Position numbers and translations under genes: made by a program. From Podarcis muralis (taxonomy: Eukaryota): DNA of 64,000 nucleotides. Under the pieces are notes generated by a model that saw only the letters and a program-made list of their open reading frames with translations, had not been told where the DNA came from and made no database searches. The stretch spans positions 19,282,001 to 19,346,000 of the forward strand of contig NC_135660.1 of NCBI RefSeq assembly GCF_964188315.1, in the 5' to 3' direction. Below, one piece after another: positions 1,955 to 45,896 of this stretch; the first letter of the stretch is position 1; each line of letters starts with the position of its first letter.

Positions 1955-4900
1955 CAAGTTTAAAAAGTCCAAAAGGTGACAACAGGTGTTATTCATCTTC
2001 TGTTTTCTTTTGTTTTTCTTGTTTTTTCTCTTCTACCGATGTAAATTATAATGACGTTAAAGGTGTACAGTTGGAATGTCAATGGGATGAACGATAAGGG
2101 AAAAAGGAACCGAATTGAGCATATTTTGAAGAAGGAAAGTTTGGACGTCATTTGTCTCCAAGAGACACATATAGCGAGGAAGCATAAAAGAATTCTGATC
2201 AATCAAAGACTAGGGAATGAATTCACATCCTCAGATCGGAGTAAAAAAAGGGGGGTGGTCATTTATATAAACAAACAAATTGAAGCGAAACATCTTTTTA
2301 AAGATGAAGAAGGAAGGATCTCAGCAGTACAAATAAAATGGCAGGGAGAAAAGATAATAATAGTGGGTATATATGCGCCAAATGAGAATAAGTCAGAATT
2401 CTATGGGAGGTTGGAAGCAAAACTATTGGAGTACGCTGACCAGAAAATTATACTATTAGGAGATATGAATGGCGTGGTGTCGTTAGAATCGGACAGATTG
2501 AGGGATTCAAAAGGTAAAGAAGGGAAGTTACCCAGAACCTTCTTCTCCCTGGTTCAAAACTGTAATTTAGTAGATATTTGGAGATTCAAACATCCCTTAG
2601 AAAAGCAATACACTTTCCATTCAGAACCTAACGATTCATCATCGAGACTAGATCAGATGTGGATTTCAAAAGAACTTGTCCCAAGATCTGCACGGGTGGA
2701 GATCCAGGTTAGAACAATCTCAGATCATAATTCAATTAAAATGGAATTGAAAGGGCAGGAGAGCAGACTAAATAGATGGAAACTGAAGGATTACCTGCTG
2801 GATGACCAAGAGATAATAGAAAAAGCTCAAAATAGATTAAAAGAGTACTTCGAAGATAATCTAGGCAGCAATATAAAACCAAGGGTTGTGTGGGACGCAG
2901 GTAAGGCGGTGATGCGGGGATTCTTCATTCAACAGAGCGCAATTAAAAACAAAAAAAGAGAAAAAGGGAAAAAAGAAATTATACAACAACTAGCAGAGAA
3001 CGAACAGAAATTAACTCAAAACCCAAAAAACAAGAAAGTAAAAGAGAACATAAAAGTTCTACAATCCCAATATACAATGCTGATAAATAGAGAGATAGAA
3101 TGGAAAATCAAAAGACTGAGACAGAGAAATTTTGAATACGCTAATAAAACTGGGAAACTATTAGCTTGGCAACTGAAGAAGAGAAAAGAACAGAATACTA
3201 TAAATAGGATAGTGGTGGAAGGAGAAGAGATAAACAAACCTAAAGAAATAAGAAGAGCCTTCTTGGACTTTTATGGAGGCCTCTTCAGGAATACGGAAAA
3301 GAGTAAGACAAGGAAAATAGAGAGATATTTAACATCTAAGAACATCAATAAGATCCCCACAGCGGACAAAGAAAATTTAAACGCCCCAATTAAGACGGAG
3401 GAAATAAAAGCAATCATATCAGATCTAAAAAATGGGAAAGCCCCAGGCCCAGATGGGTTCATCAGCAGATACTATAAAGAGATGGAATCGGTCTTGTTGA
3501 ACCCACTACAGGAAGTAATGAACAAAATTCTAAAGGAAAGAGAAATACCAGAGACGTGGAAGGAGGCACTGATCACATTAATCCCAAAGCAAGACTCAGA
3601 CTTAGAACAAATTAAAAATTACAGGCCGATCTCCCTACTAAATGTAGACTACAAGATCTTTACGGGAGTCCTGGCAAGAAGACTTAAAACTATTTTGGTA
3701 AAAAACATACATAGAGACCAAGCTGGCTTCTTGCCGGGCAGGCAGATTAAAGACAATATAAGGAATATTATAAACATTATAGAATATCTAACAGAAAGAT
3801 GCGACAAACAAGGTGCACTGTTATTCGTAGACGCTGAGAAAGCGTTTGATAACGTAAACTGGGAATTCCTGTTGAAACATATGGACTACATGGAAGTAGG
3901 CATCGAATTTTTAAATGGGATAAAAGCTATTTATACGGAACAAAAAGCAAGACTGATAATAAATGGGGTGGAAACGGAAGAAATAACAGTATCCAAAGGA
4001 ACAAGACAGGGATGCCCGCTGTCTCCACTGGTATTTATAATGATACTAGAGGTTTTGCTAAATTCCATCAGAGACAACAAAGAAATTAAAGGAATCAGGG
4101 TCGGTCAGCATGAATACAAAACTAAAGCTTTCGCAGACGATCTGGTTGTAATAATGGAAGACCCATTGGGCTCAATAAAAGAGGTACTCAAAGAATTTGA
4201 TCAATTTGGGGAAGTTGCGGGCTTTAAGTTAAACAAAAGGAAAACGAAAATATTAACTAAGAATATGCAGGCAGATAAGATTGAGGAACTACAGAAAGAA
4301 ACGGGAATAGACGTGACAAAGAAGGTGAAATACTTAGGGGTATGGGTAACGCCAAAAAATATAGATCTTTTCAAAAACAATTATGAAACAGTATGGAAAG
4401 GAGTTAAAAAAGATATAGAAGTGTGGGGTCGGCTCAGATTATCTCTTTGGGGAAGGATAGACACAATTAAAATGTCGGTGTTACCAAGAGTTTTATTTCT
4501 CTTCCAAAACATTCCAATTATAAAAGGTACAAAGATATTTAGAACCTGGCATAGAGAGATTTCTAAATTCATCTGGCAGGGGAGGAAGCCGAGAGTTAAG
4601 TTTAAACTATTGACAGACACGAAAGAAAGGGGAGGCTTCGCCCTTCCCGATCTGAAACTTTACTATGAGGCATCGTGCCTATGCTGGGTCAAAACATGGA
4701 TAAAATTGGAAGACAGGGAAGTGTTAGACTTGGAGGGGCACGACAACCGTTTTGGATGGCACGCCTATCTATGGCATGGGCGAAAGAAGGGCCATAAGGG
4801 ATTTGAAAATCATATATTTAGGGGTCCCCTGATGGAGGTATGGGAAAGATACAAGGACATGCTAGAACCTAAAACACCCCAATGGTTATCTCCATTAGAG

Positions 4901-6029
4901 GTTATGGCTGTTAAAAAGACTAATATGAGGGACAAATGGGCAACTTATGAACATCTGTTGATGAAGGAGGAAGGAAAGTGGAAAATGAGGCCATATGACC
5001 AGGTCAAATCCCAAGTATACGATTGGCTACACTACCACCAGATAAACGACATGTTTAGAAAAGACGTTAAAGACAAAGGATATGCCGACAAAAACTCCAG
5101 ATTCCAAACTGAGATTCTGGGAGATAACACAAAAATCTTATCTAAAATGTATAAGCAATTACTGGATTGGAACTTAGTTGACGAGGAGGTCAAGGCGGTA
5201 ATGACACACTGGGCCAGAGACATTGGCCGTAATATTTATTTTGAAGAGTGGGAAAAACTCTGGAAGCAACATCTTAAATTTACAGCTTGTGTGTTACTTA
5301 AAGAGAATCTAATGAAAATGTTTTACCGTTGGTATTTGACCCCGGTCAAATTAGCTAAAATGTACGGATCCTGCAACAAATGTTGGAAATGCAAGGACAG
5401 GGAGGGGACTTTTTACCACATGTGGTGGGAATGCCAAAAGATCAAAGGGTTCTGGGAGAGTGTATACAATGAAATGAAGAAAATGTTAAGATACACCTTT
5501 GTTAAAAAACCCGAGGCGTTCCTACTAGGTTTGGTAGGAACAGAGATAAAGAAAAAGGACTACAAACTATTTCAATATGCTACAACGGCAGCAAGGGTCC
5601 TGATAGCTAAGAATTGGAAACAAGAGAGTTTACCAACAATGGAGGAATGGAGATCAAAACTATTAGAATATGTGGAGATGGACAGGATGACAGGTAAAAT
5701 TAGATATATAAAAGATCAGAGGTTTGTTAAAAGTTGGGAAAACTTTACGAAATATCTGGAAAATCTAACGGACGAACAGATAACACTGGCGGGTTATAAA
5801 GGTGCTCTGTAAAAAGTAAGGGTAATACCAAAGGAAAATAGAGGAACGAGAACAGCTTGTGGCATTACAAACAAGGAAATGCGGATGTATAGTTTAATGT
5901 TACTTTGGAAGATTCGTGGAACGTCAGAAGGAAGTCTTATCTTTTGCTTTTTGTGAACAATATGAATACTGACTCATCTGTTTTGTGTTTTGTATTTTGA
6001 AATTTAATAAAAATTATGCAGAAAAAAAA
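1955..6029 (+). mobile_element. 5'-truncated L1-clade LINE (no ORF1 or 5'UTR), 4075 bp
   Basis: Intact ORF2, about 200-bp 3'UTR, AATAAA at 6006-6011 and A-tail at 6022-6031. Confidence 0.95.
2051..5812 (+). CDS. L1-type ORF2 protein: APE endonuclease, reverse transcriptase and CCHC knuckle (1253 aa)
   Basis: EN motifs SWNVNG, CLQETH, IYAPN, GDMN, RLD, SDH; RT motifs GKAPGPDGF, YRPISLLNVDYK, DAEKAFD, RQGCPLSP, FADD, YLGV; C-terminal CWKC-x8-H-x4-C. No stops or frameshifts. Confidence 0.97.
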   Translation: MTLKVYSWNVNGMNDKGKRNRIEHILKKESLDVICLQETHIARKHKRILINQRLGNEFTSSDRSKKRGVVIYINKQIEAKHLFKDEEGRISAVQIKWQGEKIIIVGIYAPNENKSEFYGRLEAKLLEYADQKIILLGDMNGVVSLESDRLRDSKGKEGKLPRTFFSLVQNCNLVDIWRFKHPLEKQYTFHSEPNDSSSRLDQMWISKELVPRSARVEIQVRTISDHNSIKMELKGQESRLNRWKLKDYLLDDQEIIEKAQNRLKEYFEDNLGSNIKPRVVWDAGKAVMRGFFIQQSAIKNKKREKGKKEIIQQLAENEQKLTQNPKNKKVKENIKVLQSQYTMLINREIEWKIKRLRQRNFEYANKTGKLLAWQLKKRKEQNTINRIVVEGEEINKPKEIRRAFLDFYGGLFRNTEKSKTRKIERYLTSKNINKIPTADKENLNAPIKTEEIKAIISDLKNGKAPGPDGFISRYYKEMESVLLNPLQEVMNKILKEREIPETWKEALITLIPKQDSDLEQIKNYRPISLLNVDYKIFTGVLARRLKTILVKNIHRDQAGFLPGRQIKDNIRNIINIIEYLTERCDKQGALLFVDAEKAFDNVNWEFLLKHMDYMEVGIEFLNGIKAIYTEQKARLIINGVETEEITVSKGTRQGCPLSPLVFIMILEVLLNSIRDNKEIKGIRVGQHEYKTKAFADDLVVIMEDPLGSIKEVLKEFDQFGEVAGFKLNKRKTKILTKNMQADKIEELQKETGIDVTKKVKYLGVWVTPKNIDLFKNNYETVWKGVKKDIEVWGRLRLSLWGRIDTIKMSVLPRVLFLFQNIPIIKGTKIFRTWHREISKFIWQGRKPRVKFKLLTDTKERGGFALPDLKLYYEASCLCWVKTWIKLEDREVLDLEGHDNRFGWHAYLWHGRKKGHKGFENHIFRGPLMEVWERYKDMLEPKTPQWLSPLEVMAVKKTNMRDKWATYEHLLMKEEGKWKMRPYDQVKSQVYDWLHYHQINDMFRKDVKDKGYADKNSRFQTEILGDNTKILSKMYKQLLDWNLVDEEVKAVMTHWARDIGRNIYFEEWEKLWKQHLKFTACVLLKENLMKMFYRWYLTPVKLAKMYGSCNKCWKCKDREGTFYHMWWECQKIKGFWESVYNEMKKMLRYTFVKKPEAFLLGLVGTEIKKKDYKLFQYATTAARVLIAKNWKQESLPTMEEWRSKLLEYVEMDRMTGKIRYIKDQRFVKSWENFTKYLENLTDEQITLAGYKGAL

Positions 6030-6115: not shown

Positions 6116-6798
6116 CAGTGTTTCCCAACCGGTGTTCCCAACACTAGTGTGCCGCGAGACGTTCCCTGGTGTGCCGTGGGAGGGAGGCGGGCGAGTCGGG
6201 CGGCGAGAGGCGGGGCGGCGGCGGCGAGGATCCGCGTCGAGCCGGGGGCGGCTCCGCGGTGGTGGTGCCGAGGTTTCTCTCTCCATTCTCCCCTCACACA
6301 CACACACAGGAAATAACACAGGATCAGCTGACAGGACCCGGCCAATGGGGCGGCGGCGGGGCAGCGCGCGCAAAAGGGAGGAGCGCGAGACAGCGGACGA
6401 GGAGGAGGCCGGCATGTCCGGGCAGCAGCAGCAACAACAGCAGCAGCAACTCCCGGCGACGGCTCCTCAAGCCCCGGGCAACCCTACTCCCTCACCGGCC
6501 TCAGCCGCCCTCCTGCTCCACCCGCCGCCGCCTCCCCCGCCGCCGCCGGCCACCTCGGCCCTGCCGCCGCCCCCTCCTCCGCCCGCTATCGCCGCCACCA
6601 CCACAACAGCCGCCGCCGCCTCAGCTGGGCCCATGCCTGCCGGGAGCGGCGGCGGCAGCAGCAGCAGCAGCGCCCCGGCGCCCTTCCCTCCCGGCGTGAC
6701 GCTGCGCGCTGACGTCACGGGGCTGTAATGGTGGTGTGCCTCAAGATTTTTTTCATCAAACAAGTGTGCCTTTGCCCAAAAAAGGTTGGGAAACACTG
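6116..6798 (+). mobile_element. Second copy of the RANBP9-carrying hAT element
   Basis: Same TIRs and TTCTAAGT TSD (6108-6115, 6799-6806). Confidence 0.92.
6414..6695 (+). pseudogene. RANBP9: Second copy of the RANBP9-like exon 1 fragment
   Basis: Same translation as 1142-1423. Confidence 0.8.
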
Positions 6799-14480: not shown

Positions 14481-15222
14481 NNNNNNNNNNNNNNNNNNNN
14501 NNNNNNNNNNNNNNNNNNNNNNNNNNNNNNNNNNNNNNNNNNNNNNNNNNNNNNNNNNNNNNNNNNNNNNNNNNNNNNNNNNNNNNNNNNNNNNNNNNNN
14601 NNNNNNNNNNNNNNNNNNNNNNNNNNNNNNNNNNNNNNNNNNNNNNNNNNNNNNNNNNNNNNNNNNNNNNNNNNNNNNNNNNNNNNNNNNNNNNNNNNNN
14701 NNNNNNNNNNNNNNNNNNNNNNNNNNNNNNNNNNNNNNNNNNNNNNNNNNNNNNNNNNNNNNNNNNNNNNNNNNNNNNNNNNNNNNNNNNNNNNNNNNNN
14801 NNNNNNNNNNNNNNNNNNNNNNNNNNNNNNNNNNNNNNNNNNNNNNNNNNNNNNNNNNNNNNNNNNNNNNNNNNNNNNNNNNNNNNNNNNNNNNNNNNNN
14901 NNNNNNNNNNNNNNNNNNNNNNNNNNNNNNNNNNNNNNNNNNNNNNNNNNNNNNNNNNNNNNNNNNNNNNNNNNNNNNNNNNNNNNNNNNNNNNNNNNNN
15001 NNNNNNNNNNNNNNNNNNNNNNNNNNNNNNNNNNNNNNNNNNNNNNNNNNNNNNNNNNNNNNNNNNNNNNNNNNNNNNNNNNNNNNNNNNNNNNNNNNNN
15101 NNNNNNNNNNNNNNNNNNNNNNNNNNNNNNNNNNNNNNNNNNNNNNNNNNNNNNNNNNNNNNNNNNNNNNNNNNNNNNNNNNNNNNNNNNNNNNNNNNNN
15201 NNNNNNNNNNNNNNNNNNNNNN
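14481..15222. other. Assembly gap (742 N)
   Basis: Run of N; right flank is a GATA repeat. Confidence 1.
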
Positions 15223-17446: not shown

Positions 17447-18382
<936 letters not shown>

Positions 18383-18516
18383 TCAAGTAAACCACAAGGG
18401 ACATTGCAGCCTAGTCCACAGGCTAATTTCTTGCAGGCCTCCTCCCTGCTCAACACAGCTGGTTAGCCTAAATAAATGCTGAGCAATCCCAATGGGAAAG
18501 CTCTTTGAATAGCAAG

Positions 18517-18705
18517 GGCCTGTAGCTCAGTGGCAGAGCATCTGATTTGCATGTAGGAGGTCCCAGATTTAATCCCTGGCGTCTTCAGGTAAGCCTGGGA
18601 ATGTCCTCTATCTACTACCACCCTGGAGAGCCACTGTCCCTCACTGTGGATGATAGTGAGCTAGAGGGACCAATCGTCTGACTCGGTATATGGCAGCTTT
18701 CCAAC
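18517..18705 (+). mobile_element. Old SINE with a tRNA-Ala-like head
   Basis: GGGCCTGTAGCTCAGTGGCAGAGCA...TTTGCATG...GGTCCCAGATTTAATCCCTGGC head and GGACCAATCGTCTGACTCGGTATATGGCAGCTT tail; related copies near 42950-43105 and 46060-46258. Confidence 0.65.
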
Positions 18706-18916
18706 ACTTATCAGCAGTTTGTTGAGGGAGAGGAACGTGTGGTGAGACTGGGTCTGGGAACATCTGAGGACCACTATAGTTCTCAGATGTTCCAAGGAGA
18801 AGTCGGCTTGCAGCGCCCCCTCCAAATACCTCACACATCTCCCTGGCCCCTCCTATCACAAAAGAGGATGCTATTCTTTGCAAAGGTCCATTAGGCATAG
18901 AACTGTACATGTGAAG

Positions 18917-19114
18917 CAGGGGCACCAACTTGCCCCCACATACACGCACTGGTGGGCAGTGTCACATGACATGTTCCACCCCCACCCGGTGCACCAACAC
19001 TCTCCTGTTAGCAGCAGGGGATGGCAACCCCCTCAATATTGGGGGGCTCAGCCCCCTGCCCACAAATATTGAGGGGGCCGAAGCCCCTTTCGCCCCCTAT
19101 GGTTGGTGCCCCTG
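18917..19114. mobile_element. hAT MITE in OTOL1 intron 3
   Basis: Perfect 13-bp TIR CAGGGGCACCAAC / GTTGGTGCCCCTG; perfect 8-bp TSD ATGTGAAG. Confidence 0.9.
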
Positions 19115-19710
19115 ATGTGAAGTCATAACGTCTCATGGGGATCCAAGAACCCCTCCACCGGGGAAGGAACTTTGTGACGATGTAATTGTATTGACTAGAA
19201 GAGTTGTGTAGCCTGGTGTGATTAAAAGGAAAAAGGGAAAAACTTGAAGAGAAGCACAGGACTACAAGAAATGGCAATTTGAGGATGTCATTCCCAACCA
19301 GGTGCCATAGCAAATTATAGCTGTTGGTTGCTTCTCTAGCAAAATGATCTAGTATGTGTTGGGAGTAAACGGCGACACTTGCTATTCGCTACCTGAATGG
19401 GGGGGGGGGGGCAATAAACTGAAAGACAACCTGTTCTTACTCCTCAAATAGTCCTTCTCTTCTAGTAGCTGCTTGTTGATGAAGAAGATCATTTCCTTTC
19501 GGACTTTGCTTCCTTCCTGCTTCACTCTAGCCAGTTCTAGCCAGTTACAGTATGAGCTACTGCCTCCATTTTGGCCACATGTAAAGCCAGAATGGCTTTG
19601 TTTGCCATGTCTTTATTTTTATGTTTCTTTTATTTTTTCAGTCAGCATTCTTATTAGATTATTTATTTCTACACATGTACAAACATACTTTACCAAACTG
19701 TAACAGTATG

Positions 19711-19766
<56 letters not shown>

Positions 19767-19773
19767 GATAGAT
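19711..19773 (+). repeat. (GATA)n microsatellite
   Basis: Direct reading. Confidence 0.95.
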
Positions 19774-20086
19774 ATATTCCACTCCTGTAACTTCATATCC
19801 TACTCCATCTCCCATCTGCTCAGTTTTTCACATGGTTTTGTGATTTTCTGGGCCTCTTTTCCCTTGTCACCAGGCCTCACTCATTCATCCACCTCCCACC
19901 CCAGAACTTGGCACTGATCCACTACAAGCAGTATACAATCTGTGCTTAGCATTGACATGTGACAGCTGGGCATATGGTGACAACTTGTGGCCAATGGAAG
20001 AGATTGGGTTCAACGAGAGTGTAAAATTCTTATGCTTTATGAACAGACCCATCTCCCTAACTCTCATCAAATTTAATGTGGCATAC

Positions 20087-20158
20087 CTTGTTCTCCTGTC
20101 TTGCCTGGAAATCCCGGGATTCCATTTGCTCCTTGGGCTCCATGTTCTCCTTTATCTC
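20087..20158 (-). CDS. OTOL1: Otolin-1 exon 3 (72 bp)
   Basis: CACAG|GA...CAAG|GTATG; encodes (G)DKGEHGAQGANGIPGFPGKTGEQ(G); phase 1-1. Confidence 0.88.
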
Positions 20159-21081
20159 CTGTGACATTTTTACAATAGAATGTTCTGTTATTGGTGTTCT
20201 TTGGAATGTCCCTACATGTCAAATGACTTATACATCACATTTCATCTCTTGCCTTTCACTCAAAATGAGGGCACATCTCATTCCAAACAAACATATAGTA
20301 AGTGCAAATAAACATTTTAGGTTGCATTCCATGAATTCAATTGTTCGTCAGGTAATTGTGACCTGTGAAAGAAGGTTTCCTGATACAAAGATGGTCAGAC
20401 AAATAGAATAAATTCTGCTGGAATCATAGAATTGTAGAGTTTGATCTAAGGGTCATCTAGTCCAAATCCCTGAAATGCAGGAATCACAGGTAGTCCAATC
20501 CCTGACAGTTGGACATCCAACCTTGGTTGGTTGGTTGGTTGGTTGGTTAATTGCTTGGCTGGCTGGCCTCATCTGACTCAAGCACACCCGCCTCCTCCTC
20601 CTCCTCCTCAGTAGGCTGCCTCAGCCTCATCTAAAGATCTGGGGGCAAGGCGCCCACGAAACTGCTGCTACTGCCAGCAACAGCAGCAGGATGCACAGTG
20701 AAGAGCATTCCCTGCCTCTTGAGAGAGGCGCAGGCTGAGGGAGAGGGTGTGCTATTTTTTTTTTCTTCTGAAATTTTGCACCCCAATAGTTTTGCACCCA
20801 AGGCATCTGACCCTTTGGACCCCTCCCCCCCCCCCCAATGCTATGCCGGTGTCTGTGATTGTAAGTTGTTTTAGACTTTTCTTAACATTGAGGGTTGTAA
20901 CGCAGTCTGGAACCTGAGGGTGAAGGGCAAGATGATGCTAACCCTATTGGAGGTCAGAAGCTGAAAAAAGAGGTTCAAGCCTGAAAATGTGAAAGAAGTT
21001 GGGGTTTCCTTCATTTCACGCTCCGAAGACATTACTGTGCAAAACATTCATTTTTCAAACAGTTCACTTGTGTGTCCATAC

Positions 21082-21171
21082 CTTTGTCTCCTTTGAATCC
21101 TCTTGCACCTTGTAGTCCAGGACTTCCTGGTAGACCCTGAAGTCCTTTTTCTCCCGCCTCTCCTTTCAGAC
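21082..21171 (-). CDS. OTOL1: Otolin-1 exon 2 (90 bp)
   Basis: AATAG|GT...AAAG|GTATG; encodes (G)LKGEAGEKGLQGLPGSPGLQGARGFKGDK(G). Confidence 0.92.
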
Positions 21172-21856
21172 CTATTTACAGAGTGGACATTTGAAAAATC
21201 TGCTGCAAGCAAAACAAAAAGTCTTGTAGCATCTTGAGGGCTAACCAATATCTCATGAGACTTACGCCGTGACAGATTGCTGTTGGTCTCAAAAGCTTCA
21301 CAAGATGTTGTGTTGCCTTTGCTGCAACAGAGCAGCAGGCCTGTCCCCCTGGAAGCAAGTTGCATGACCACACAAGTTTGCCAACAAGGCACTGATATAT
21401 TCCCCTTTACACTGCATCTAGTTTCACAGACACTAAATAAGAATGAAGATTACTCAGTGATGTTGTTGTTATCAAACTAGCAGACTTTTGAAATCCTAAA
21501 ACAGATGTATACGTCATTAGCCATGGAAGCTAAATACAGGAATGCTCAAGTTACAGAGGGGCCTGAAGAAGGGACCTTTTGTGATAGTCACCTTAGTTAC
21601 TTAGGTACTGTTTTAAGGAGACAACTTAACTCTGCCGCATCTTTAGCCCTGCCACACACAGCAGCCAGGGTGAAAGGGAGGGCAAGCAGATCACTGCACT
21701 GGCATGCAGCTGGTGCAGTGATCAGGCCTGGATCAGGCCTCCTGCCATCATGTGATGGCAGCCAGATTGTTTCAGGATCCAATAGATCCCAAGTTGGCTC
21801 AACACCCAGCTCCATGCCCCAGAAGGCCAACATACAGTGGGCAAAAGGAGTAGCTA

Positions 21857-22361
21857 TGTATGGACTGGCCGGATACAGAGGAATGGTGGAAGGGACCAGC
21901 TAGGGAACCCCCAGGGAAAGAAGGCTCAGAGCCCAGGGATTGGCAGTGTTCAGAGGGAGAAGAGGGAGAGGACTGGAGGGAGGAGGTGTTGGAAGCTGAA
22001 GAGCTAACAGGGTTCAGTGAGCGGGAAGAGCCTCTGGCAGAGAGAAGTCCAGAAGGAGAAGCAGGAGAGGAAGGAGGCCAAGAGGCAAAGATGAGTCAGG
22101 TTGGTGAAGAAGCCAGGGTATCTCCCCCTCCTGCTGCGACAAGCTCTCCTCCCCTCTCAGATTGCTTGGGAAACCCTGGGAGAGGAGGAGACTTAGGCAG
22201 CTGTGGGAAGGCAAGGACTTTCAGTCTCCACCTCATAGGGGCAAGATCAACCAAGAAGAGTTGCTGTACCCATTAGACCTGGTACTCCTGAGCGGACCTT
22301 GCTTCTTCTAATAGTTAACTCCAGTTATTCCATGTGATTTATTGCTGGCTGGATGCTGACA
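21857..22361 (+). mobile_element. Putative solo LTR in OTOL1 intron 1
   Basis: TG...CA termini and a purine-rich body resembling a repeat I recognise from lacertid genomes; no TSD seen. Confidence 0.5.
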
Positions 22362-22892
22362 CTCTGCTCCAGTGACCCTGGCATCAGCCTGCAGGTGGCC
22401 AATGGAGGACAGCAGAGCTGGACAACTCTCCCCAATCCAAACCACCACCCCAAAGCAGGTTTGGACTGCTCTCCCAGAAAGTTACAGGGGTGATTTGGTT
22501 AAAATTGAGGAGCAGGGCTTAAGGATTTCAGCAAGCTGCTCTTTTTTACTCACCAGCCCCCAAATAATTTAAGAATTGTTTCAGCAACAGTATACTTCCA
22601 CCAGATGCTTGAGACAAACAGATCCTGTGCTGCCTTTTTAAAAATCTATATTTTCATATATTCTAGCTTTACCTTGATCATGGCACCGCATCGCTCTTCC
22701 CCAGTGATTGACTTGTGATGAATTAAAATGTTTGCACCTATTTCTCTCCCTCCCTCCTTCCTTCCCTCTCTCTCTCTCTCTCTCTCACCCACCCACCCAC
22801 ACACACACACACATCCTGCTTATTTCAGTCTGGAAATAAGAATGACAAAGGGCCATGGTAAATCACTCAGTAGTGCATTAGCCTTTCCATAC

Positions 22893-23259
22893 CTGGCAAT
22901 CCTCGCTCTCCGGGTTCGCCTTTCTCCCCTGGGGTGGCAGCACAGCAATCGCAGCAGTTAAAGAAGAAGTCGGATGAGTCGAGGGTGAAGTTTTCAAAAG
23001 GGAAGAGAGTGGTGGCTGTTCGGAAGGCGTAGTTTGGAGTGGAGAGCTCCAAGGTGGAGTCGCTTGTCTCTGCTGGTTCAGTGAAATGGTTGTCTTCAGT
23101 GGGTGAAGCATCAGATGCACCAAGGCCGTCTCCGTCTTCCACGCCAGCCACTTTTATCTTTGTGAACTTGGGCGATGGGGTACTTTTGCCCTCTGTGCTC
23201 AGTTTAGCAACAGTGATTACCACTGCCAAGACAGCACACCACCAGTGCATGCTCCACAT
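22893..23259 (-). CDS. OTOL1: Otolin-1 exon 1: signal peptide, N-terminal region, Cys cluster and start of collagen
   Basis: MWSMHWWCAVLAVVITVA...FPFENFTLDSSDFFFNCCDCC...PGEKGEPGERGLP(G); donor CCAG|GTATG. The four exons sum to 1428 bp, 475 aa. Confidence 0.95.
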
Positions 23260-31078: not shown

Positions 31079-31510
31079 NNNNNNNNNNNNNNNNNNNNNN
31101 NNNNNNNNNNNNNNNNNNNNNNNNNNNNNNNNNNNNNNNNNNNNNNNNNNNNNNNNNNNNNNNNNNNNNNNNNNNNNNNNNNNNNNNNNNNNNNNNNNNN
31201 NNNNNNNNNNNNNNNNNNNNNNNNNNNNNNNNNNNNNNNNNNNNNNNNNNNNNNNNNNNNNNNNNNNNNNNNNNNNNNNNNNNNNNNNNNNNNNNNNNNN
31301 NNNNNNNNNNNNNNNNNNNNNNNNNNNNNNNNNNNNNNNNNNNNNNNNNNNNNNNNNNNNNNNNNNNNNNNNNNNNNNNNNNNNNNNNNNNNNNNNNNNN
31401 NNNNNNNNNNNNNNNNNNNNNNNNNNNNNNNNNNNNNNNNNNNNNNNNNNNNNNNNNNNNNNNNNNNNNNNNNNNNNNNNNNNNNNNNNNNNNNNNNNNN
31501 NNNNNNNNNN
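31079..31510. other. Assembly gap (432 N)
   Basis: Run of N. Confidence 1.
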
Positions 31511-40576: not shown

Positions 40577-41295
40577 TTAATCAGGGTATAACAGAAACCC
40601 TGAAAATACAGAATCAGTGGTTTCATCAGCCACCAGCCCGTTTTGAGAGCCATTCAAAACCTGAAGCCAAATCTCATCATCTTCAGAGAGGTGAACCAGC
40701 ATCGATCCAGAGACCTGGGAAACGCTCTGTGGAGGCTGCCTTACGCTTGACACCTGCATAAGTCTTTCACCGTTGTGGAAGAGCGCCGCCCTCAGCGCCT
40801 TGCCAGAGACACTCAGGTGATAACTGAAAGAATAGACTCCTCCAGTGTTGGCAGTAAATATGCCCGATTCCTCGTGATATGCTTCATTTTCATTCAGGAA
40901 AACCTTTTCAAATCTCACTGGGGATCCTGGCAATGGGAAGCTTCTCCTTTTCTGAAGGCCAGCTGAAAAGGCTACAGGTTCAACCGATCTGCAGTCCCCC
41001 TTCTGGCCCTTTTCGCCTCTTCGGCCTGGAAGTCCAGTTAGCCCTTCTCTCCCAGGGGCACCAACTGTTCCCTGCATCCCTGCATCTCCTTTTAAACCAG
41101 GAGCTCCTTGAATTCCTGGTGGCCCTCCTGGTCCTATCTCCCCCTTCTCACCTGCTATGCCTCTTTCTCCTTTCTCCCCAGGGTCACCTTTCTGTCCAGT
41201 GTCACCTTTTGGGCCTGGTTCTCCACGTTCCCCTGTGTCTCCCTTTGGCCCCGGAATTCCTATGGGGCCAGGGCTCCCAACCTCACCTTTGTCAC
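40577..41295 (-). CDS. Otolin-like collagen/C1q gene, last exon (34 Gly-X-Y triplets and gC1q domain)
   Basis: GDKGEVGSPGPIGIP...GQKGDC, then VAFSAGL...FEKVFLNENEAY...GVYSFSYHL...IWLQV...[12 protein letters not shown]. The in-frame acceptor is the second AG of TTTTCCAAGAG. Confidence 0.88.
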
Positions 41296-43175
41296 CTCTT
41301 GGAAAAGAAAAATCGGTAGAGCCACCATATTGTTCTGCCTGATGAGGGGACACTGGTCTACCTACAGCAGCCCTGGATCTGGAATCCCCCCTTTCCGCTG
41401 TTCTGCCTTGTCCGACGTCTACCAAAGACCGCAGTTCTCCTCTTCTCCTAGCAAGTCTCAGCACATCTGGAAGGAAACAGGAGCAGATCTTTATCCACTG
41501 TCATATAAACTGAGAAAAATTCTCAATCAAAACATATAGCAAAATTGCACTAAGCTCAAGTATAAACAGTAACATGCTTACACACACACAGGACCAAACG
41601 AATCTCAACTAGCATCATTGCAGGTCCTCATTTATGTTCCAGTTTCCCCTCTATAAAACATGCAGCTATAGGGGAGGGGGCACTTCAGTGGAAGTGCTTT
41701 GTATACAGAAGGTCTCAGACTCAATCCTTGCATCTTTCCTTTAAAAATTCTGGGGAATGTCGCTGCATGAGACCCTGTGAAGCTATTGCCACTTCACAGT
41801 AGACAGATCTGGGCTTGATGGACAAATGATCTTTCATGGTGCAAGGCAACTGTCTGTCTTCCATGGGGGCAAGAAACAGACTACAAAATCTATTACTATA
41901 GACCTCCCAGTTGGGTTGGTCCTGTACCTGCAGCGTAATGCAGCAAAATGCAGCTCTTTGATCTACATTGACACTATTCGAGGAGGAGCAACAACAAATA
42001 GTACTGCTACATTGCTATATAACTGAAATGCCATAACCCAGCCCTTAACTGAACAACTTCTGCCCAATGTGTTCTACCTTCACCAGCCTATGAGTAACCC
42101 TTACATATTGCTTTGTGATGGGTGCTTAAATCTAACACCCAAAAGGTCCAAGAAACAGCTTCAAATTTTACAGTTAAATGTATGCATGAAAAGATGGTAT
42201 GAGCATCATGGTAACTATCATCATACTTTGGGTCAATGACTGTAACCATAGGAGTCCCTGAGGTCATATTTAAAGAATCATTAAAATGTACTCATTTATA
42301 TGATACTCTGGTGTGTCTCCAAATGAGCCATTACAGCTCCGTGTGGTGAATTATGCACCCCTCTAGAAAGGATTGTGCTTTTCTCAATTACTGCACAGGA
42401 GGTGCCGAACACATTCATATTCCACGCTGAACTGAGCACCACCAACACTTCTGAAACATAATGGTTAATGCCAGGACATGAATCCCCTGGCATTTTCACA
42501 TGAGGCTGAAACCACCTTTGAATATATCTTATGCTGTTTGTGTTAATGGTAGGGATGCAATACAATTAATAGTTAATAGTTAGGTTAAATGTGCCTACAC
42601 TTACAAACGTGTCTAACCAATAGTTCTGATTTTGCATTGCAACAGAAATCATCTTAAAAGATACAATCTTCACTAGGTAAGGGAAGGGGATTTGTTTAAA
42701 TGAAGAATGCAGTCTGAAGTTTTATAAGCATTTCCAAAAAGGTGTGCTGGTTTAATAATATATCAAAAGTTTTTAAAGCAATTAGTCTGGTGGATTAATC
42801 AATAAACACCACAGCCACAGTTCATAGTATTCATGCAGAAGAAAAGAAAAAAAAGCATTTGCAAGCCTCATGAACATTCTGCCCAGTGTAGATCAAAGAG
42901 CTGCTTTAAGCTACATGTGGGAAGCTTAAACCCCCACCATGCTTTACTAGCTGGGCTGTAGCTCAGTGGAAAAACTCATGCATTGCATGCACACACAAGG
43001 TCCCAGTTTCAATCCCCAGTGTCTCTAGGTAGGGCTAGGAAACACACTTGGTTCAAAACCCTGCAGAGCCTACTGAGGTGGATGGACCAATGGTCTGACT
43101 CAGGTCCCATCTGTACAATACATTTAAAATAGTGTCTTGTCCCTTTAAAGAACTCCCTGAATCCTGGGGAGTGTA

Positions 43176-43497
43176 CAGTGGTGCCCCGCAAGACGAATGC
43201 CTCGCAAGACGGAAAACCCGCTAGACGAAAGGGTTTTCCGTTTTGGAGGTGCTTCGCAAAACGAATTTGCTATGGGCTTGCTTCGCAAGACGAAAATGTC
43301 TTGCGAGTTGCTGCAGGGTTTCCCCCCCCCCCTTTTCCCAAGCCGCTAAGCCGCTTATCAGCTGATCCGCTAAGCCCGCTAAGCCGCTAATAGCGCTAAT
43401 CCACTAAGCCGCTAATGGGCTTGCTTCGCAAGACGAAAAAACCGCAAGACGAAGAGACTCGCGGAATGGATTCTTTTCGTCTTGCGAGGCACCACTG
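43176..43497. mobile_element. Tigger-like MITE (second family) nested in a larger palindromic repeat (about 43113-43745)
   Basis: TIR CAGTGGTGCC / GGCACCACTG, TA TSD, internal GCAAGACG and GCTAAGCC repeats. Confidence 0.88.
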
Positions 43498-44815
43498 TAG
43501 TTTGTTAAGGATGTTGAGAGTTCTTGGGAGACCCCTATTCTCTTCCACTCACAGAGCTCCAATTCTTAGAGTGGTATAACAAGCAATGGTTCTTCCCAGG
43601 GAACTCTGGGAATTGGAGCTCTGTGAGGGGAATCGGCGTTTCTTAACAGCTCTTAGCACCCTTAATAAACTACAGTTCCCATGATTCTTTGGGGGGGAAC
43701 GTCATGACTGTTTAAAGTGGTAAGATACTGTTTTAAATGTATAGCACAAATGGGGCCTTAAGCCTTGGCCTAACACTGAAGATCCAGAATGCTTTTCTTC
43801 TGAGAAGCCATGATGTCTTCAGAACCAGTCATTGTTAGTCTGTTGTCTATCCCAATAGTTTTCCAACTTTCTACTTCCCAGGAACTCTTCCCACATTGAC
43901 ATTCGTCAAGAATCTCTTGCATGTCTGCCACGGAGACCCTGTGGGTTGCAGAGGAGTCTGGGAAATGTTTTAGGCTGCACACACATACAAAGTGCATGAA
44001 GAACATTGGCCATTCCTGGTGGGCCTCATTACTGCTATGCATATACCCAGGGCTGTTTGTTTGTTTGTTTGTTTGTTTGTTGCAGCCGGAACTCTCTGGA
44101 ACTCAGTTCTGGCACCTCTCAGGTGGGCGCCATTGCCATTCTGAACGAACAAGGGAGGTGTTTGTGGTGAGTTCCAGGACCTTTTTTTCCTAGAAAAACA
44201 GCGCTGCCCCAGATTGCTGCAGCTGAACATTTTGTAGTACCATCAATAGTGGAGGGCAAGCTTTCCTGAACAGGAACTTGGCAGTTGTTACTGAGGTTCC
44301 TTATTGAGGAAGCCTTGCTAAGATTACAAGGAGCCCTGGGATTTCCCAGAACACTGTTTGAAAACCACTCATTTATCTCAGTCACCTCACGCTGTAGTTA
44401 CATCTGTCCAAGTCACGCTGCTTCATTGCAGGTGCTTCATGAGTTCAGCAGAGTCTTGGGGCTTATTATAAAATTGCAGATGGTCTGCTACCAAATACTA
44501 CCAGATTATGAGAAGGAGAACATGGGTGTTATGGGTCAGGCAGCTCTGCTGGCGTTTGGTGCTCTGCACACCGGCAAGTTTGTGTGCGAGACGCGAGGGA
44601 CACAATTTGTCCATTTACCCGCCGCCGAGTATCTCTTTACTTCATTGCACAGAGCATTTGGATTTGGGGGGATTTTCAGTATGATACTGATCCGGTTGTT
44701 TTTAATTAGAAAATAAATGAATGGCGTTCAGTTTTGGTTTTTTTGTTGTTGTTTTTAAAAAAGGAAAGAAAGAAAAAGATTTTGGCAACCTGAAGGCATT
44801 AAGCGATACAATTAC

Positions 44816-45419
44816 CCGCATTCTCTTTTTCACCTTGGTCTCTCTTTTGTCCTTCGGCTCCTGGAATTTTACAGAAGCAGCGTCGCTCAGTATCGGTGCT
44901 GTTTCCCTTTGGTGCATTTGAGAAGGCAGGATCTACGCGGTCGCCAACTGCAAGGCCTTTGTTAGTCGCAGAAAATGGAACCAGGCGGGTAGTACGGTTT
45001 TCCTCCCTGGAAACACCCATAGCTGGGGAGGTATGCTCTGTGTTTGGAGCAGTGAACAATTCCAGGGCCACCTGTTGTCTGGATCCAATGGCAGTGGTGG
45101 TTGTGGTGGTGGCCCCTGGTTCCAGAAGGTTCTTCTTGCTTCCACCCACCCCGTTAAAGAAAGAGGTTGCCGCAGGTGTCACGGCGATCTGGGAACTCGC
45201 TCGACTCCCACCATCTGTGACCAGATCAATTACATTGGTCTCTGGGTCCTGATCAGGGGGAACAGTGAAGGCTTGTTTAGGGTCTTCAGTTTCAGCGACA
45301 CCGCTGAGTGACTCCATTGTGAAGAGAGGGTAGGGAGAAAAGCTGACGATGGCTGATGTCCTCGCGGGGCTCCAGAGGGCGCTGGAGAGCAGAGCTTGGA
45401 TCAGGAGTATGGGAATCAT
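44816..45419 (-). CDS. Otolin-like collagen/C1q gene, first coding exon: signal peptide, Ser/Thr-rich stalk, CxC and start of collagen
   Basis: MIPILLIQALLSSALWSPARTSA...RCFCKIPGAEGQKRDQGEKENA(G); donor GCGG|GTAATT, phase 1; acceptor TTTGCACCTTTTCAG|ACATG just upstream of the ATG. Joined to 40577-41295 it gives 1323 bp, 440 aa. Confidence 0.8.
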
Positions 45420-45451: not shown

Positions 45452-45896
45452 NNNNNNNNNNNNNNNNNNNNNNNNNNNNNNNNNNNNNNNNNNNNNNNNN
45501 NNNNNNNNNNNNNNNNNNNNNNNNNNNNNNNNNNNNNNNNNNNNNNNNNNNNNNNNNNNNNNNNNNNNNNNNNNNNNNNNNNNNNNNNNNNNNNNNNNNN
45601 NNNNNNNNNNNNNNNNNNNNNNNNNNNNNNNNNNNNNNNNNNNNNNNNNNNNNNNNNNNNNNNNNNNNNNNNNNNNNNNNNNNNNNNNNNNNNNNNNNNN
45701 NNNNNNNNNNNNNNNNNNNNNNNNNNNNNNNNNNNNNNNNNNNNNNNNNNNNNNNNNNNNNNNNNNNNNNNNNNNNNNNNNNNNNNNNNNNNNNNNNNNN
45801 NNNNNNNNNNNNNNNNNNNNNNNNNNNNNNNNNNNNNNNNNNNNNNNNNNNNNNNNNNNNNNNNNNNNNNNNNNNNNNNNNNNNNNNNNNNNNNNC
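45452..45896. other. Assembly gap (445 N)
   Basis: Run of N next to a GATA repeat, immediately upstream of the paralog's first coding exon. Confidence 1.

What the first reader, a model, noticed from the sequence alone, without database searches (positions are those of the whole stretch)
40577..45419. Tandem otolin-like paralog upstream of OTOL1 with a mucin-like stalk
Seen: same strand as OTOL1 and the same overall architecture (signal peptide, Cys motif, collagen, C1q ending SGFLLYPD), but with two coding exons instead of four, about 39 collagen triplet positions, and an N-terminal region of about 160 aa rich in Thr/Ser/Pro with NRT and NST glycosylation sequons. The C1q domain is strongly diverged from the neighbouring OTOL1. 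Known: otolin-1 scaffolds otoconia and otoliths; I recall no such paralog beside human OTOL1. Inference: an old local duplicate or relocated C1QTNF-type gene retained in this lineage, with uncharacterised function.
Basis: partly seen in the sequence, partly recalled or inferred. Interest (0 to 1): 0.7.

Follow-up and report, generated by a model that had tools for sequence, protein, structure and literature searches.

The report
Unnamed ancient C1q-collagen gene beside OTOL1
Just upstream of the ear-stone gene OTOL1, this wall lizard carries an intact gene for a secreted collagen-plus-C1q protein; the same unnamed gene sits there in lizards, snakes, turtles, amphibians and lungfish, was not found in birds, mammals or ray-finned fishes, and its function is untested.

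Summary
A minus-strand gene has two coding exons, 45419-44816 and 41466-40577, and encodes about 497 aa. In order it has a signal peptide, a roughly 155-aa disordered Ser/Thr-rich acidic region, a Cys-Phe-Cys motif, a 56-aa decayed ex-collagen linker, 34 Gly-X-Y triplets and a gC1q domain. It lies 17.3 kb upstream of OTOL1 on the same strand. "Mucin-like" is overstated: S+T+P is 28% and there are no mucin-type tandem repeats.

It is not OTOL1, fish otol1a/otol1b, CTRP2/7, a fish CTRP9A-type protein or adiponectin. Its gC1q forms its own clade whose branching follows the species tree from lungfish to lizards. Read-through gene models that fuse it to OTOL1 in a lizard, a snake, two turtles, a caecilian and a lungfish show the tandem pair is old. 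A collagen-less shark and ray relative with a locus tag next to otolin may push it back to early jawed vertebrates. No bird, crocodilian, mammal or ray-finned fish member was found.

All tetrapod members have lost the two acidic residues that bind Ca2+ on the trimer axis in otolin-1 and adiponectin.

Databases give it inconsistent automatic names, and I found no paper on it.

The parts
44816..45419 (-). Coding exon 1 (604 nt, phase 1 end): signal peptide, disordered N-terminal region, CFC motif and the first relic Gly-X-Y triplets.
   Evidence: ORF and sequence. It is 98.5% identical to the Podarcis muralis model P0131 and 92% to Zootoca P0132. Donor GCGG|GTAATT. tblastn of P0132 maps its residues 1-203 to 45419-44817.
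45348..45419 (-). Predicted signal peptide (about aa 1-24; the cleavage site is not determined).
   Evidence: Hydrophobic N-terminus conserved in all full-length orthologs. It is the only helix in the AlphaFold2 model, residues 3-14.
44991..44999 (-). N-glycosylation sequon NRT (aa 141-143).
   Evidence: A sequon is kept in this neighbourhood in most aligned orthologs (alignment).
44895..44903 (-). N-glycosylation sequon NST (aa 173-175); N173 is invariant in 20 orthologs.
44871..44879 (-). Cys-Phe-Cys motif (C181, C183) directly before the start of the collagen. It is the likely site of inter-chain disulfides.
   Evidence: C183 is invariant and C181 nearly invariant across 20 orthologs. OTOL1 has NCCDCC here instead.
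44833..44834 (-). Alternative 5' splice site A (CAAG|GTGAAA), 18 nt upstream of donor B and also phase 1.
   Evidence: It is used in the Ensembl Podarcis model P0131 and the Thamnophis model P0010.
41467..44815 (-). Intron (3.35 kb, GT...AG).
40577..41466 (-). Coding exon 2 (890 nt including the TAA stop at 40577-40579).
   Evidence: ORF. Acceptor ttccttccAG|AT. It is 99.7% identical to P0131.
41297..41466 (-). 56-aa non-collagen linker: decayed remnant of the first collagen segment (Col1).
   Evidence: It aligns to intact Gly-X-Y repeats in turtle, amphibian and lungfish orthologs. Triplet counts are 31-35 in squamates against 48-59 in the others.
40991..41296 (-). Collagen triple-helix segment, 34 uninterrupted Gly-X-Y triplets.
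40589..40972 (-). Globular C1q domain. The two axial Ca2+-binding acidic positions are neutral (site 1 Ser or Val depending on the alignment; site 2 Ser).
   Evidence: Pfam PF00386, 7.3e-30, full length 1-127/127. Alignment to adiponectin structures. Column table across families.
45452..45895 (.). Assembly gap beginning 32 bp upstream of the ATG. It hides the promoter and 5'UTR region.
   Evidence: A good acceptor (cttttcag) sits 2 nt before the ATG, suggesting an upstream non-coding exon.
17450..23259 (-). Neighbouring OTOL1 (four coding exons), 17.3 kb downstream of the stop codon of this gene.
   Evidence: Its gC1q sits inside the tetrapod OTOL1 clade.

Best explanation
This is an intact member of an ancient, so far unnamed group of orthologous genes in the C1q/collagen superfamily. 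I call the group NF here. NF sits head-to-tail immediately upstream of OTOL1.

Shown by sequence and comparison:
- The gene encodes a protein with a signal peptide and a roughly 155-aa acidic Ser/Thr-rich N-terminal region. That region is predicted disordered but carries short motifs and N-glycosylation sequons conserved from frogs to lizards.
- A Cys-Phe-Cys motif follows, then a collagen stalk and a C-terminal gC1q domain.
- The family is present in squamates, turtles, amphibians and lungfish, in the same tandem position.
- In squamates the first collagen segment has decayed to a linker, leaving 34 triplets.
- In all tetrapod members the two acidic residues that bind Ca2+ on the gC1q trimer axis are neutral.

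Inferred from what is known of adiponectin, the CTRPs and otolin-1:
- The protein is secreted and N-glycosylated.
- It trimerises through gC1q and the triple helix.
- It does so without needing axial Ca2+, as otolin-1 Asp/Glu-to-Ala mutants do.
- Trimers are linked into larger oligomers by the CFC cysteines, which would display three disordered acidic tails.

Physiological role (inferred, roughly 30% likely): an extracellular-matrix partner of otolin-1 in the inner ear. The basis is the several-hundred-million-year linkage and shared orientation with OTOL1. Otherwise it is a circulating or tissue CTRP-like factor.
For: Gene model:
- ORFs, canonical splice sites and Pfam Collagen and C1q hits.
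- Collinear mapping of the Zootoca model.
- 98.5-99.7% identity to the Podarcis muralis protein.

Conservation:
- Orthologs at 81% (Tiliqua), 62% (turtle), 57% (salamanders), about 50% (frogs) and 54% (lungfish).
- The gC1q is 89% identical to Tiliqua, against 64% for exon 1.
- The N-terminal motifs were found only in this family.

Distinctness:
- The careful tree gives NF 94/84, with branching inside NF that follows the species tree.
- All named families form separate clades at 99-100.
- With a gC1q query, only NF members reach a single-domain score of 150 bits or more; the next best single-domain matches score 107 bits or less.

Tandem linkage:
- Fused NF-OTOL1 models occur in Zootoca, Erythrolamprus, Malaclemys, Caretta, Rhinatrema and Protopterus.
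- Consecutive locus tags occur in Phrynosoma and Hymenochirus.

Ca2+ site:
-, together with PMC8211825.

Disorder:
-.
Against: - There is no expression evidence of any kind. The Logan proteins are genomic exon-2 ORFs, not transcripts.
- The promoter lies in an assembly gap.
- Decay of a third of the collagen in squamates, and of all of it in the shark relatives, shows relaxed constraint on part of the protein.
- The backbone of the gC1q tree is unresolved, so kinship with OTOL1 rests on position only.
- The shark grouping is weak (93/48).
- The absence calls rest on annotated proteomes, not on genome searches.
- Fused models may be annotation artefacts rather than real read-through transcripts.
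Confidence: 0.8

Rival explanations
1. It is the one-to-one ortholog of a named gene: a C1QTNF (CTRP2, CTRP7 or CTRP9) or the fish otol1b / 'inner ear-specific collagen' gene. The NCBI automatic names suggest this.
For: Automatic names given to orthologs include C1QTNF2-like, C1QTNF9-like, otolin-1-A-like and otolin-1. The best solved-structure match is adiponectin (98 bits). In a low-resolution tree NF fell next to CTRP2/7 with SH-aLRT 88.
Against: - In the careful tree CTRP2/7 (100/100), fish CTRP9A (99/96), adiponectin (99/96) and OTOL including otol1a and otol1b (100/99) each exclude NF.
- Otolin a/b and tetrapod OTOL1 share the NCCDCC/NFCECC motif and a CENGTKG interruption that NF lacks.
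- No mammal or bird protein approaches the similarity of the lungfish ortholog.
- True tetrapod CTRP9 was not explicitly sampled in the tree.
Confidence: 0.05
2. It is a decaying or non-functional duplicate (a pseudogene in the making) that gene predictors still call.
For: The first collagen segment has lost its Gly periodicity in all squamates. The lacertid copy also lost the Cys of the inter-collagen CxxC interruption. The canonical Ca2+ ligands are gone. No transcript evidence was obtained.
Against: - Open reading frames are intact, with canonical splice sites, in more than ten squamates and many amphibians.
- The gC1q is 89% identical between lacertid and skink, against 64% for the N-terminal region.
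- Motifs in a disordered region and the invariant N173 sequon are conserved over the tetrapods.
- The phylogeny follows the species tree and has short terminal branches.
Confidence: 0.07
3. It is a lineage-specific recent tandem copy of OTOL1 that diverged fast, so its position outside the OTOL clade is a long-branch artefact.
For: It is adjacent to OTOL1 on the same strand. The NF stem is long (0.93). A single NF+OTOL clade is not rejected (AU p = 0.285).
Against: NF orthologs with the same N-terminal motifs exist in amphibians, and a lungfish ortholog shares the CFC motif and gC1q. Each of these has its own OTOL1. Any duplication therefore predates the lungfish-tetrapod split. Shark otolin groups with other otolins, not with NF.
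Confidence: 0.03
4. It is functional, but as a circulating adipokine-like or immune CTRP rather than an inner-ear matrix protein. On this view the linkage to OTOL1 is historical only.
For: gC1q similarity ranks adiponectin above collagen X, collagen VIII and CTRP5. The architecture (signal peptide, variable region with Cys, short collagen, gC1q) is that of the CTRPs. Loss of the axial Ca2+ site argues against an otolin-like Ca2+-dependent role.
Against: Nothing direct. The tandem position and shared orientation have been kept since before the lungfish split. Fused read-through models in six species hint at shared transcription. The long acidic disordered tail is unlike the CTRPs.
Confidence: 0.4

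Closest known systems
Otolin-1 (OTOL1; fish otol1a and otol1b)
   Same: It is the neighbouring gene on the same strand. The overall plan is the same: signal peptide, Cys-containing N-terminal region, collagen, gC1q. The C-terminus also ends in SGFLLYPD-type residues. gC1q identity is about 35-41%.
   Different: - The N-terminal region is unrelated: CFC instead of NCCDCC, and none of OTOL1's ENFTLD motif.
- It has 34 triplets against 73-74, and two coding exons against four.
- It falls outside the gnathostome OTOL clade.
- It lacks the two acidic residues that form the Ca2+ site in otolin-1.
Adiponectin and the CTRP (C1QTNF) proteins, especially CTRP2/7 and CTRP9/9A
   Same: It has a short collagen stalk plus gC1q, with Cys residues before the collagen that in those proteins link trimers into higher oligomers. 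Adiponectin is the best solved-structure match (98 bits). Fish CTRP9A has a similar CVC motif just before its collagen.
   Different: Its gC1q clade is separate. It has a far longer, conserved, disordered N-terminal region. The axial Asp residues conserved in adiponectin, CTRP2/7 and CTRP9A are lost. There is no mammalian member.
Collagen X / VIII NC1 domains
   Same: The gC1q fold is similar at 88 and 75 bits. By PMC8211825, collagen VIII also trimerises without axial Ca2+.
   Different: Their collagen domains are much longer, they form a distinct clade (100/99), and they lack the N-terminal architecture.
A fish, coelacanth and lungfish clade annotated 'inner ear-specific collagen-like' or 'C1QTNF9-like' (here famX; examples P0192 from Latimeria, P0215 from Protopterus)
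   Same: It is another unnamed collagen-gC1q family related to otolin, present in lineages without a curated name.
   Different: It is a separate clade at 100/100, with a different N-terminal Cys pattern (CMCMNC-type). The lungfish has both famX and NF.

Membership tests
C1q/TNF superfamily, collagenous branch | C-terminal globular C1q domain | tested here: met
   Pfam PF00386 at 7.3e-30, covering profile positions 1-127 of 127. Matches to adiponectin, collagen X and C1q structures.
C1q/TNF superfamily, collagenous branch | Gly-X-Y collagen repeat directly N-terminal to gC1q | tested here: met
   34 uninterrupted triplets at 40991-41296. Pfam Collagen at 3.9e-16.
C1q/TNF superfamily, collagenous branch | Secretion signal and trimer assembly | not testable with these tools
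   The hydrophobic N-terminus is conserved and is modelled as the only helix. No signal-peptide predictor or assembly assay was available.
Otolin-1 (OTOL1) | gC1q falls inside the OTOL1/otol1a/otol1b clade | tested here: not met
   The OTOL clade (95/94 and 100/99) excludes NF.
Otolin-1 (OTOL1) | N-terminal four-Cys motif (NCCDCC / NFCECC) and about 70 Gly-X-Y triplets with a CENGTKG interruption | tested here: not met
   NF has CFC and 34 triplets. The window's own OTOL1 has NCCDCC, and OTOL1 proteins have 73-74 triplets.
Otolin-1 (OTOL1) | Conserved acidic pair forming the axial Ca2+ site (human E417 and D425; PMC8211825) | tested here: not met
   Both positions are neutral in every tetrapod NF. 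They are Asp and Asp in lungfish NF, and acidic in all OTOL, adiponectin and collagen VIII/X rows.
Otolin-1 (OTOL1) | Inner-ear-restricted expression and presence in the otoconial matrix | not testable with these tools
CTRP2/CTRP7, fish CTRP9A, adiponectin | gC1q falls inside the respective clade | tested here: not met
   Each clade has 99-100 support and excludes NF. Tetrapod CTRP9 itself was not sampled.
Mucin-like domain | Very high Ser/Thr/Pro content arranged in tandem repeats | tested here: not met
   S+T+P is 28% of the mature exon-1 part. The only repeat in exon 1 is a six-codon Thr run. O-glycosylation itself could not be tested.
NF orthologous group (defined here) | N-terminal motifs (FTMExLxG, EDPKQAxTVP, DPVTDGG), CFC before the collagen, an NF-type gC1q, and a position upstream of OTOL1 | tested here: met

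The most novel reading that the evidence does not exclude
[quoted passage not shown] On this reading its loss in birds and mammals went with their switch to purely calcitic otoconia.

What fits:
- NF was found in lungfish, amphibians, turtles and squamates, with a possible relative in sharks and rays. It was not found in birds or mammals.
- That parallels the polymorph distribution summarised in PMC3038909.
- The acidic disordered tail on an otolin-like scaffold resembles the acidic disordered proteins that control CaCO3 polymorph in fish otoliths (my own knowledge; not tested here).

What does not fit:
- Teleosts have aragonite otoliths but no NF was found in them.
- Crocodilians are unresolved.
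Probability: 0.12. Interest if true: 0.8.

Novelty: new member of a known kind. Interest (0 to 1): 0.45.

Why it matters
Otolin-1 is the collagen scaffold of vertebrate ear stones, and it is usually treated as a single gene outside teleosts. This finding shows it has a constant next-door partner gene of the same architecture. That partner has been kept since at least the lungfish-tetrapod ancestor, was not found in birds or mammals, and is hidden in databases under contradictory automatic names or fused into 'otolin-1' models.

- If it is expressed in the ear, it is an unstudied component of otoconia in amphibians and reptiles, and a candidate for why their crystals differ from ours.
- If it is not, it is a new CTRP-like secreted factor absent from the usual model mammals.
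- In either case, the fused NF-OTOL1 models (Zootoca, Erythrolamprus, Malaclemys, Caretta, Rhinatrema, Protopterus) should be checked, because they may misdescribe OTOL1 itself.

Tried and rejected
- The Logan-derived proteins were checked as possible transcripts. They start in translated polypyrimidine tract, so they are genomic exon-2 ORFs.
- The ESM Atlas gave no usable hit for exon 1. Pfam finds nothing in exon 1 or in the N-terminal regions of orthologs.
- Paper searches for otolin-2, otol2, otolin-like, c1qtnf9 with Xenopus, inner ear-specific collagen, and C1q family evolution found nothing on this gene. The library excludes most subscription journals.
- The bacterial-type promoter and terminator scan is irrelevant to a vertebrate gene and was ignored.
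- The N-terminal 60 aa of the Ensembl Podarcis model have no match in the window. They lie in the gap, beyond the window, or are an artefact.
Every search used exon 1 or exon 2 by reference, or database orthologs.
- No human sequence was fetched or compared beyond what the solved-structure tool listed.


Full report
**What is in the sequence**

On the minus strand, an ATG at 45419 opens a 206-codon ORF, and a second ORF runs from 41464 to the TAA at 40577-40579. Pfam finds Collagen (3.9e-16) and a full-length C1q domain (7.3e-30) in the second ORF and nothing in the first. A six-frame scan for Gly-X-Y runs also locates the OTOL1 collagen exons at about 17.9-22.9 kb on the same strand.

OTOL1 starts at 23259 and has four coding exons ending at 17450. 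The gene under study therefore lies 17.3 kb upstream of OTOL1, head to tail. An assembly gap (45452-45895) begins 32 bp upstream of the ATG and hides the promoter. A good acceptor 2 nt before the ATG suggests an upstream non-coding exon.

**Gene model**

Full-length orthologous models from Tiliqua, Sceloporus, Phrynosoma and Zootoca read from the end of exon 1 straight into the 56 residues that precede the collagen run. The Zootoca protein maps collinearly onto the window at 45419-44817 and then from 41467.

- Exon 1 is 45419-44816 (donor GCGG|GTAATT).
- Exon 2 is 41466-40577 (acceptor ttccttccAG|AT).
- The junction codon is GAT, and the product is 497 aa.
- A second donor 18 nt upstream (44834, CAAG|GTGAAA) has the same phase and is used in the Ensembl Podarcis and NCBI Thamnophis models. 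Which donor is used in vivo, or whether both are, could not be tested.

All searches used exon 1 or exon 2 by reference, or database orthologs.

**Source organism**

Exon 1 is 98.5% and exon 2 is 99.7% identical to a Podarcis muralis protein.

**Protein anatomy**

1. Residues 1 to about 24 are a hydrophobic signal-like segment.
2. Residues 25 to about 180 are acidic (22 D+E against 17 K+R) and Ser/Thr-rich. S+T+P is 28%, and the only DNA repeat in exon 1 is a six-codon Thr run.
   - AlphaFold2 with a 20-sequence alignment gives mean pLDDT 47 and no secondary structure beyond the signal helix. The alignment is shallow, so this is suggestive of disorder rather than proof.
   - The region nevertheless carries short motifs conserved from frogs to lizards: FTMExLxG, EDPKQAxTVP and DPVTDGG. 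One invariant sequon (N173) and a second sequon region are also conserved.
   - 'Mucin-like' is therefore too strong. 'Disordered, glycosylated, motif-bearing tail' fits better.
3. A Cys-Phe-Cys motif follows (C183 invariant, C181 nearly so), directly before PGxEGQK.
4. Next comes a 56-aa linker that is not collagen in squamates. It aligns residue for residue with intact Gly-X-Y repeats in turtles, amphibians and lungfish.
   - Triplet counts are 31-35 in squamates, 50 in a turtle, 48-57 in amphibians (typically 22 + 35, split by a CxxC interruption) and 59 in lungfish. OTOL1 has 73-74.
   - Squamates have thus lost the first collagen segment by substitution of the glycines, not by deletion.
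5. Then come 34 uninterrupted triplets.
6. The protein ends with the gC1q domain.

**Relatives and distribution**

A search with exon 2 found the following:

| Group | Identity to the window protein |
|---|---|
| Skink (Tiliqua) | 81% |
| Geckos, iguanians | 74-78% |
| Snakes | 65-70% |
| Turtle (Pelusios) | 62% |
| Salamanders | 57% |
| Frogs | about 47-52% |
| Fish and shark otolins | about 41% |
| True OTOL1 proteins | 35-40% |

- No bird, crocodilian or mammal protein appears above OTOL1 level.
- Searches with the N-terminal region of a frog and of a skink ortholog recovered only frogs, a caecilian, lacertids, other squamates and turtles.
- A full HMMER scan of 1.84 billion representatives with the gC1q alone gave ten hits at E ≤ 1e-30. 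Single-domain scores of 150 bits or more belong only to this family. The other high totals are proteins with two to four C1q domains.
- That scan added Xenopus laevis (named 'C1QTNF9'), Caretta and the lungfish Protopterus annectens.
- The lungfish 'otolin-1' model of 1,263 aa is a fusion. Residues 1-518 are an NF protein (Thr/Ser-rich tail, CFC, 59 triplets, gC1q 54% identical). Transposon-like sequence follows, and then a complete OTOL1.

The absences rest on annotated proteomes. The 50%-identity clustering of the big library could hide a close member inside a listed cluster, so the word search carries most of the weight for birds, crocodilians and mammals.

**Tandem position**

The position next to OTOL1 is conserved.

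- Besides the lungfish, NCBI models that start with the NF exon(s) and continue into OTOL1 from its own start exist for Zootoca, Erythrolamprus, Malaclemys, Caretta and Rhinatrema.
- Consecutive locus tags link the two genes in Phrynosoma (007525/007526) and Hymenochirus (010123/010122).
- In several other species both proteins come from the same chromosome-scale record.

Whether the fusions reflect real read-through transcripts or model-building artefacts is unknown.

**Phylogeny**

*First tree (54 rows), rooted on fish CTRP9A.* NF (100/99) falls outside a clade of all jawed-vertebrate otolins, including shark otolin and teleost otol1a/otol1b (95/94). The NF stem is long, at 0.93.

*Careful tree (72 rows), with representatives named through cluster look-ups.*
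- NF including lungfish is a clade (94/84), and its internal branching follows the species tree: lungfish, then amphibians, then turtles plus squamates.
- OTOL (100/99), CTRP2/7 (100/100), adiponectin (99/96), fish CTRP9A (99/96), collagen VIII/X (100/99), CTRP5, C1qA-C and an unnamed fish/coelacanth/lungfish clade (100/100) are all separate.
- The backbone is unresolved.
- Forcing NF plus the shark relatives plus OTOL into one clade costs 5.8 log-likelihood units and is not rejected (AU p = 0.285).

An ancient tandem duplication is therefore compatible with the data but not demonstrated by them.

**Possible cartilaginous-fish counterpart**

- Proteins from bamboo and epaulette sharks and a stingray group with NF, weakly (93/48).
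- Their best matches outside cartilaginous fishes are NF members, by small margins.
- They have a signal peptide, an acidic Ser/Thr-rich glycosylated tail, a CC motif followed by a vestige of a collagen start, no collagen at all, and a gC1q.
- In Chiloscyllium punctatum the gene's locus tag (0007381) is adjacent to that of otolin (0007382) on the same 3.08-Mb scaffold.

I rate orthology at roughly 60%. If it holds, the pair dates to early jawed vertebrates, and collagen was lost independently to different degrees in sharks and squamates.

**The Ca2+ site**

In adiponectin, collagen X and otolin-1, two conserved acidic residues bind Ca2+ on the trimer axis (human otolin-1 E417 and D425). Replacing them with alanine in otolin-1 reduces Ca2+ binding and gives trimers that are stable without Ca2+ (PMC8211825).

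- The HMMER alignment to adiponectin and a family-wide column table show that OTOL, adiponectin and collagen VIII/X rows keep an acidic residue at both positions.
- Fish CTRP9A and CTRP2/7 rows keep Asp at both positions.
- Lungfish NF keeps Asp at both.
- Every tetrapod NF has neutral residues at both: Ser or Val at the first depending on the alignment and Ser at the second in this lizard, and Cys at the second position in frogs and turtles.

The inference is that tetrapod NF trimerises without axial Ca2+. This was not tested here.

**Function**

The architecture and its conservation are shown. The following is inferred from adiponectin, the CTRPs and otolin-1: secretion, N-glycosylation, trimerisation through gC1q and the triple helix, and disulfide-linked higher oligomers through the CFC cysteines.

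The physiological role is open. The long-kept linkage and shared orientation with OTOL1, and the acidic disordered tail, make an inner-ear matrix role attractive; I put it at about 30%. A CTRP-like circulating or tissue factor is at least as likely. No expression data could be obtained.

**Novelty**

The gene is predicted in many genomes, but under contradictory automatic names: C1QTNF2-like, C1QTNF9-like, otolin-1-A-like, otolin-1, inner ear-specific collagen-like, or uncharacterised. In other genomes it is fused to OTOL1.

I found no paper that describes it, with the caveat that the library lacks most subscription journals. It is a new, unnamed member family of a well-known kind of protein rather than a new kind of system.

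**The most novel reading not excluded**

NF's distribution parallels that of non-calcitic otoconia. [quoted passage not shown] Teleosts are an exception, since they have aragonite otoliths and no NF was found in them. Crocodilians are unresolved. I give this reading about 12%.

Noticed in passing
window 17450-23259 (minus strand): OTOL1 itself looks intact. It has four coding exons (about 23259-22885, 21172-21080, 20159-20085, 18346-17450), the NCCDCC motif, and a gC1q that clusters with other lizard OTOL1 proteins.
   Followed up: partly
P0132 (Zootoca), P0133 (Erythrolamprus), P0134 (Malaclemys), P0136 (Caretta), P0129/P0130 (Rhinatrema), P0135 (Protopterus): Public 'otolin-1' gene models in six species are chimeras that begin with the upstream NF gene and continue into OTOL1. 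In squamates the junction uses GT sites inside NF exon 2 (near 41153 and 41296 in window terms). They are either real read-through transcripts or annotation artefacts.
   Followed up: partly
P0192 (Latimeria), P0215 (Protopterus), P0139, P0200, P0189 and other teleost proteins: A further unnamed collagen-gC1q clade (100/100) is present in teleosts, coelacanth and lungfish. It is annotated 'inner ear-specific collagen-like', 'C1QTNF9-like' or 'collagen alpha-1(V)', and is distinct from otolin and from NF. Some models are tandem two-domain fusions.
   Followed up: partly
P0177, P0288, P0289 (bamboo and epaulette sharks), P0233 (stingray): The NF-like proteins of sharks and a ray keep the signal peptide, the acidic Ser/Thr-rich tail and the gC1q, but have no collagen at all. 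In Chiloscyllium the gene's locus tag is adjacent to that of otolin.
   Followed up: partly
NF orthologs of frogs and turtles (for example P0017, P0018, P0126, P0011, P0014), gC1q site-2 column: Where other families have the axial Ca2+-binding Asp, frogs and turtles have a Cys. This would place three thiols near the trimer axis. The significance is unknown.
   Followed up: no
window 45452-45895, 31079-31510, 14481-15222: There are three assembly gaps. The first begins 32 bp upstream of the NF start codon, so the promoter and any 5' non-coding exon cannot be read. The 60-aa N-terminal extension of the Ensembl Podarcis model has no match in the window.
   Followed up: partly
window 2051-5812 (+), with duplicated ORF pairs at 860-1456 and 6132-6728: A 1,253-codon ORF is flanked by two identical-length ORF pairs. 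This matches the L1 insertion with duplicated flanks already noted by an earlier finding on this window.
   Followed up: no
window 43340-43415: A 33-bp / 8-bp tandem array (AAGCCGCT-type, score 101) lies inside the NF intron. It is probably part of a repeat element.
   Followed up: no
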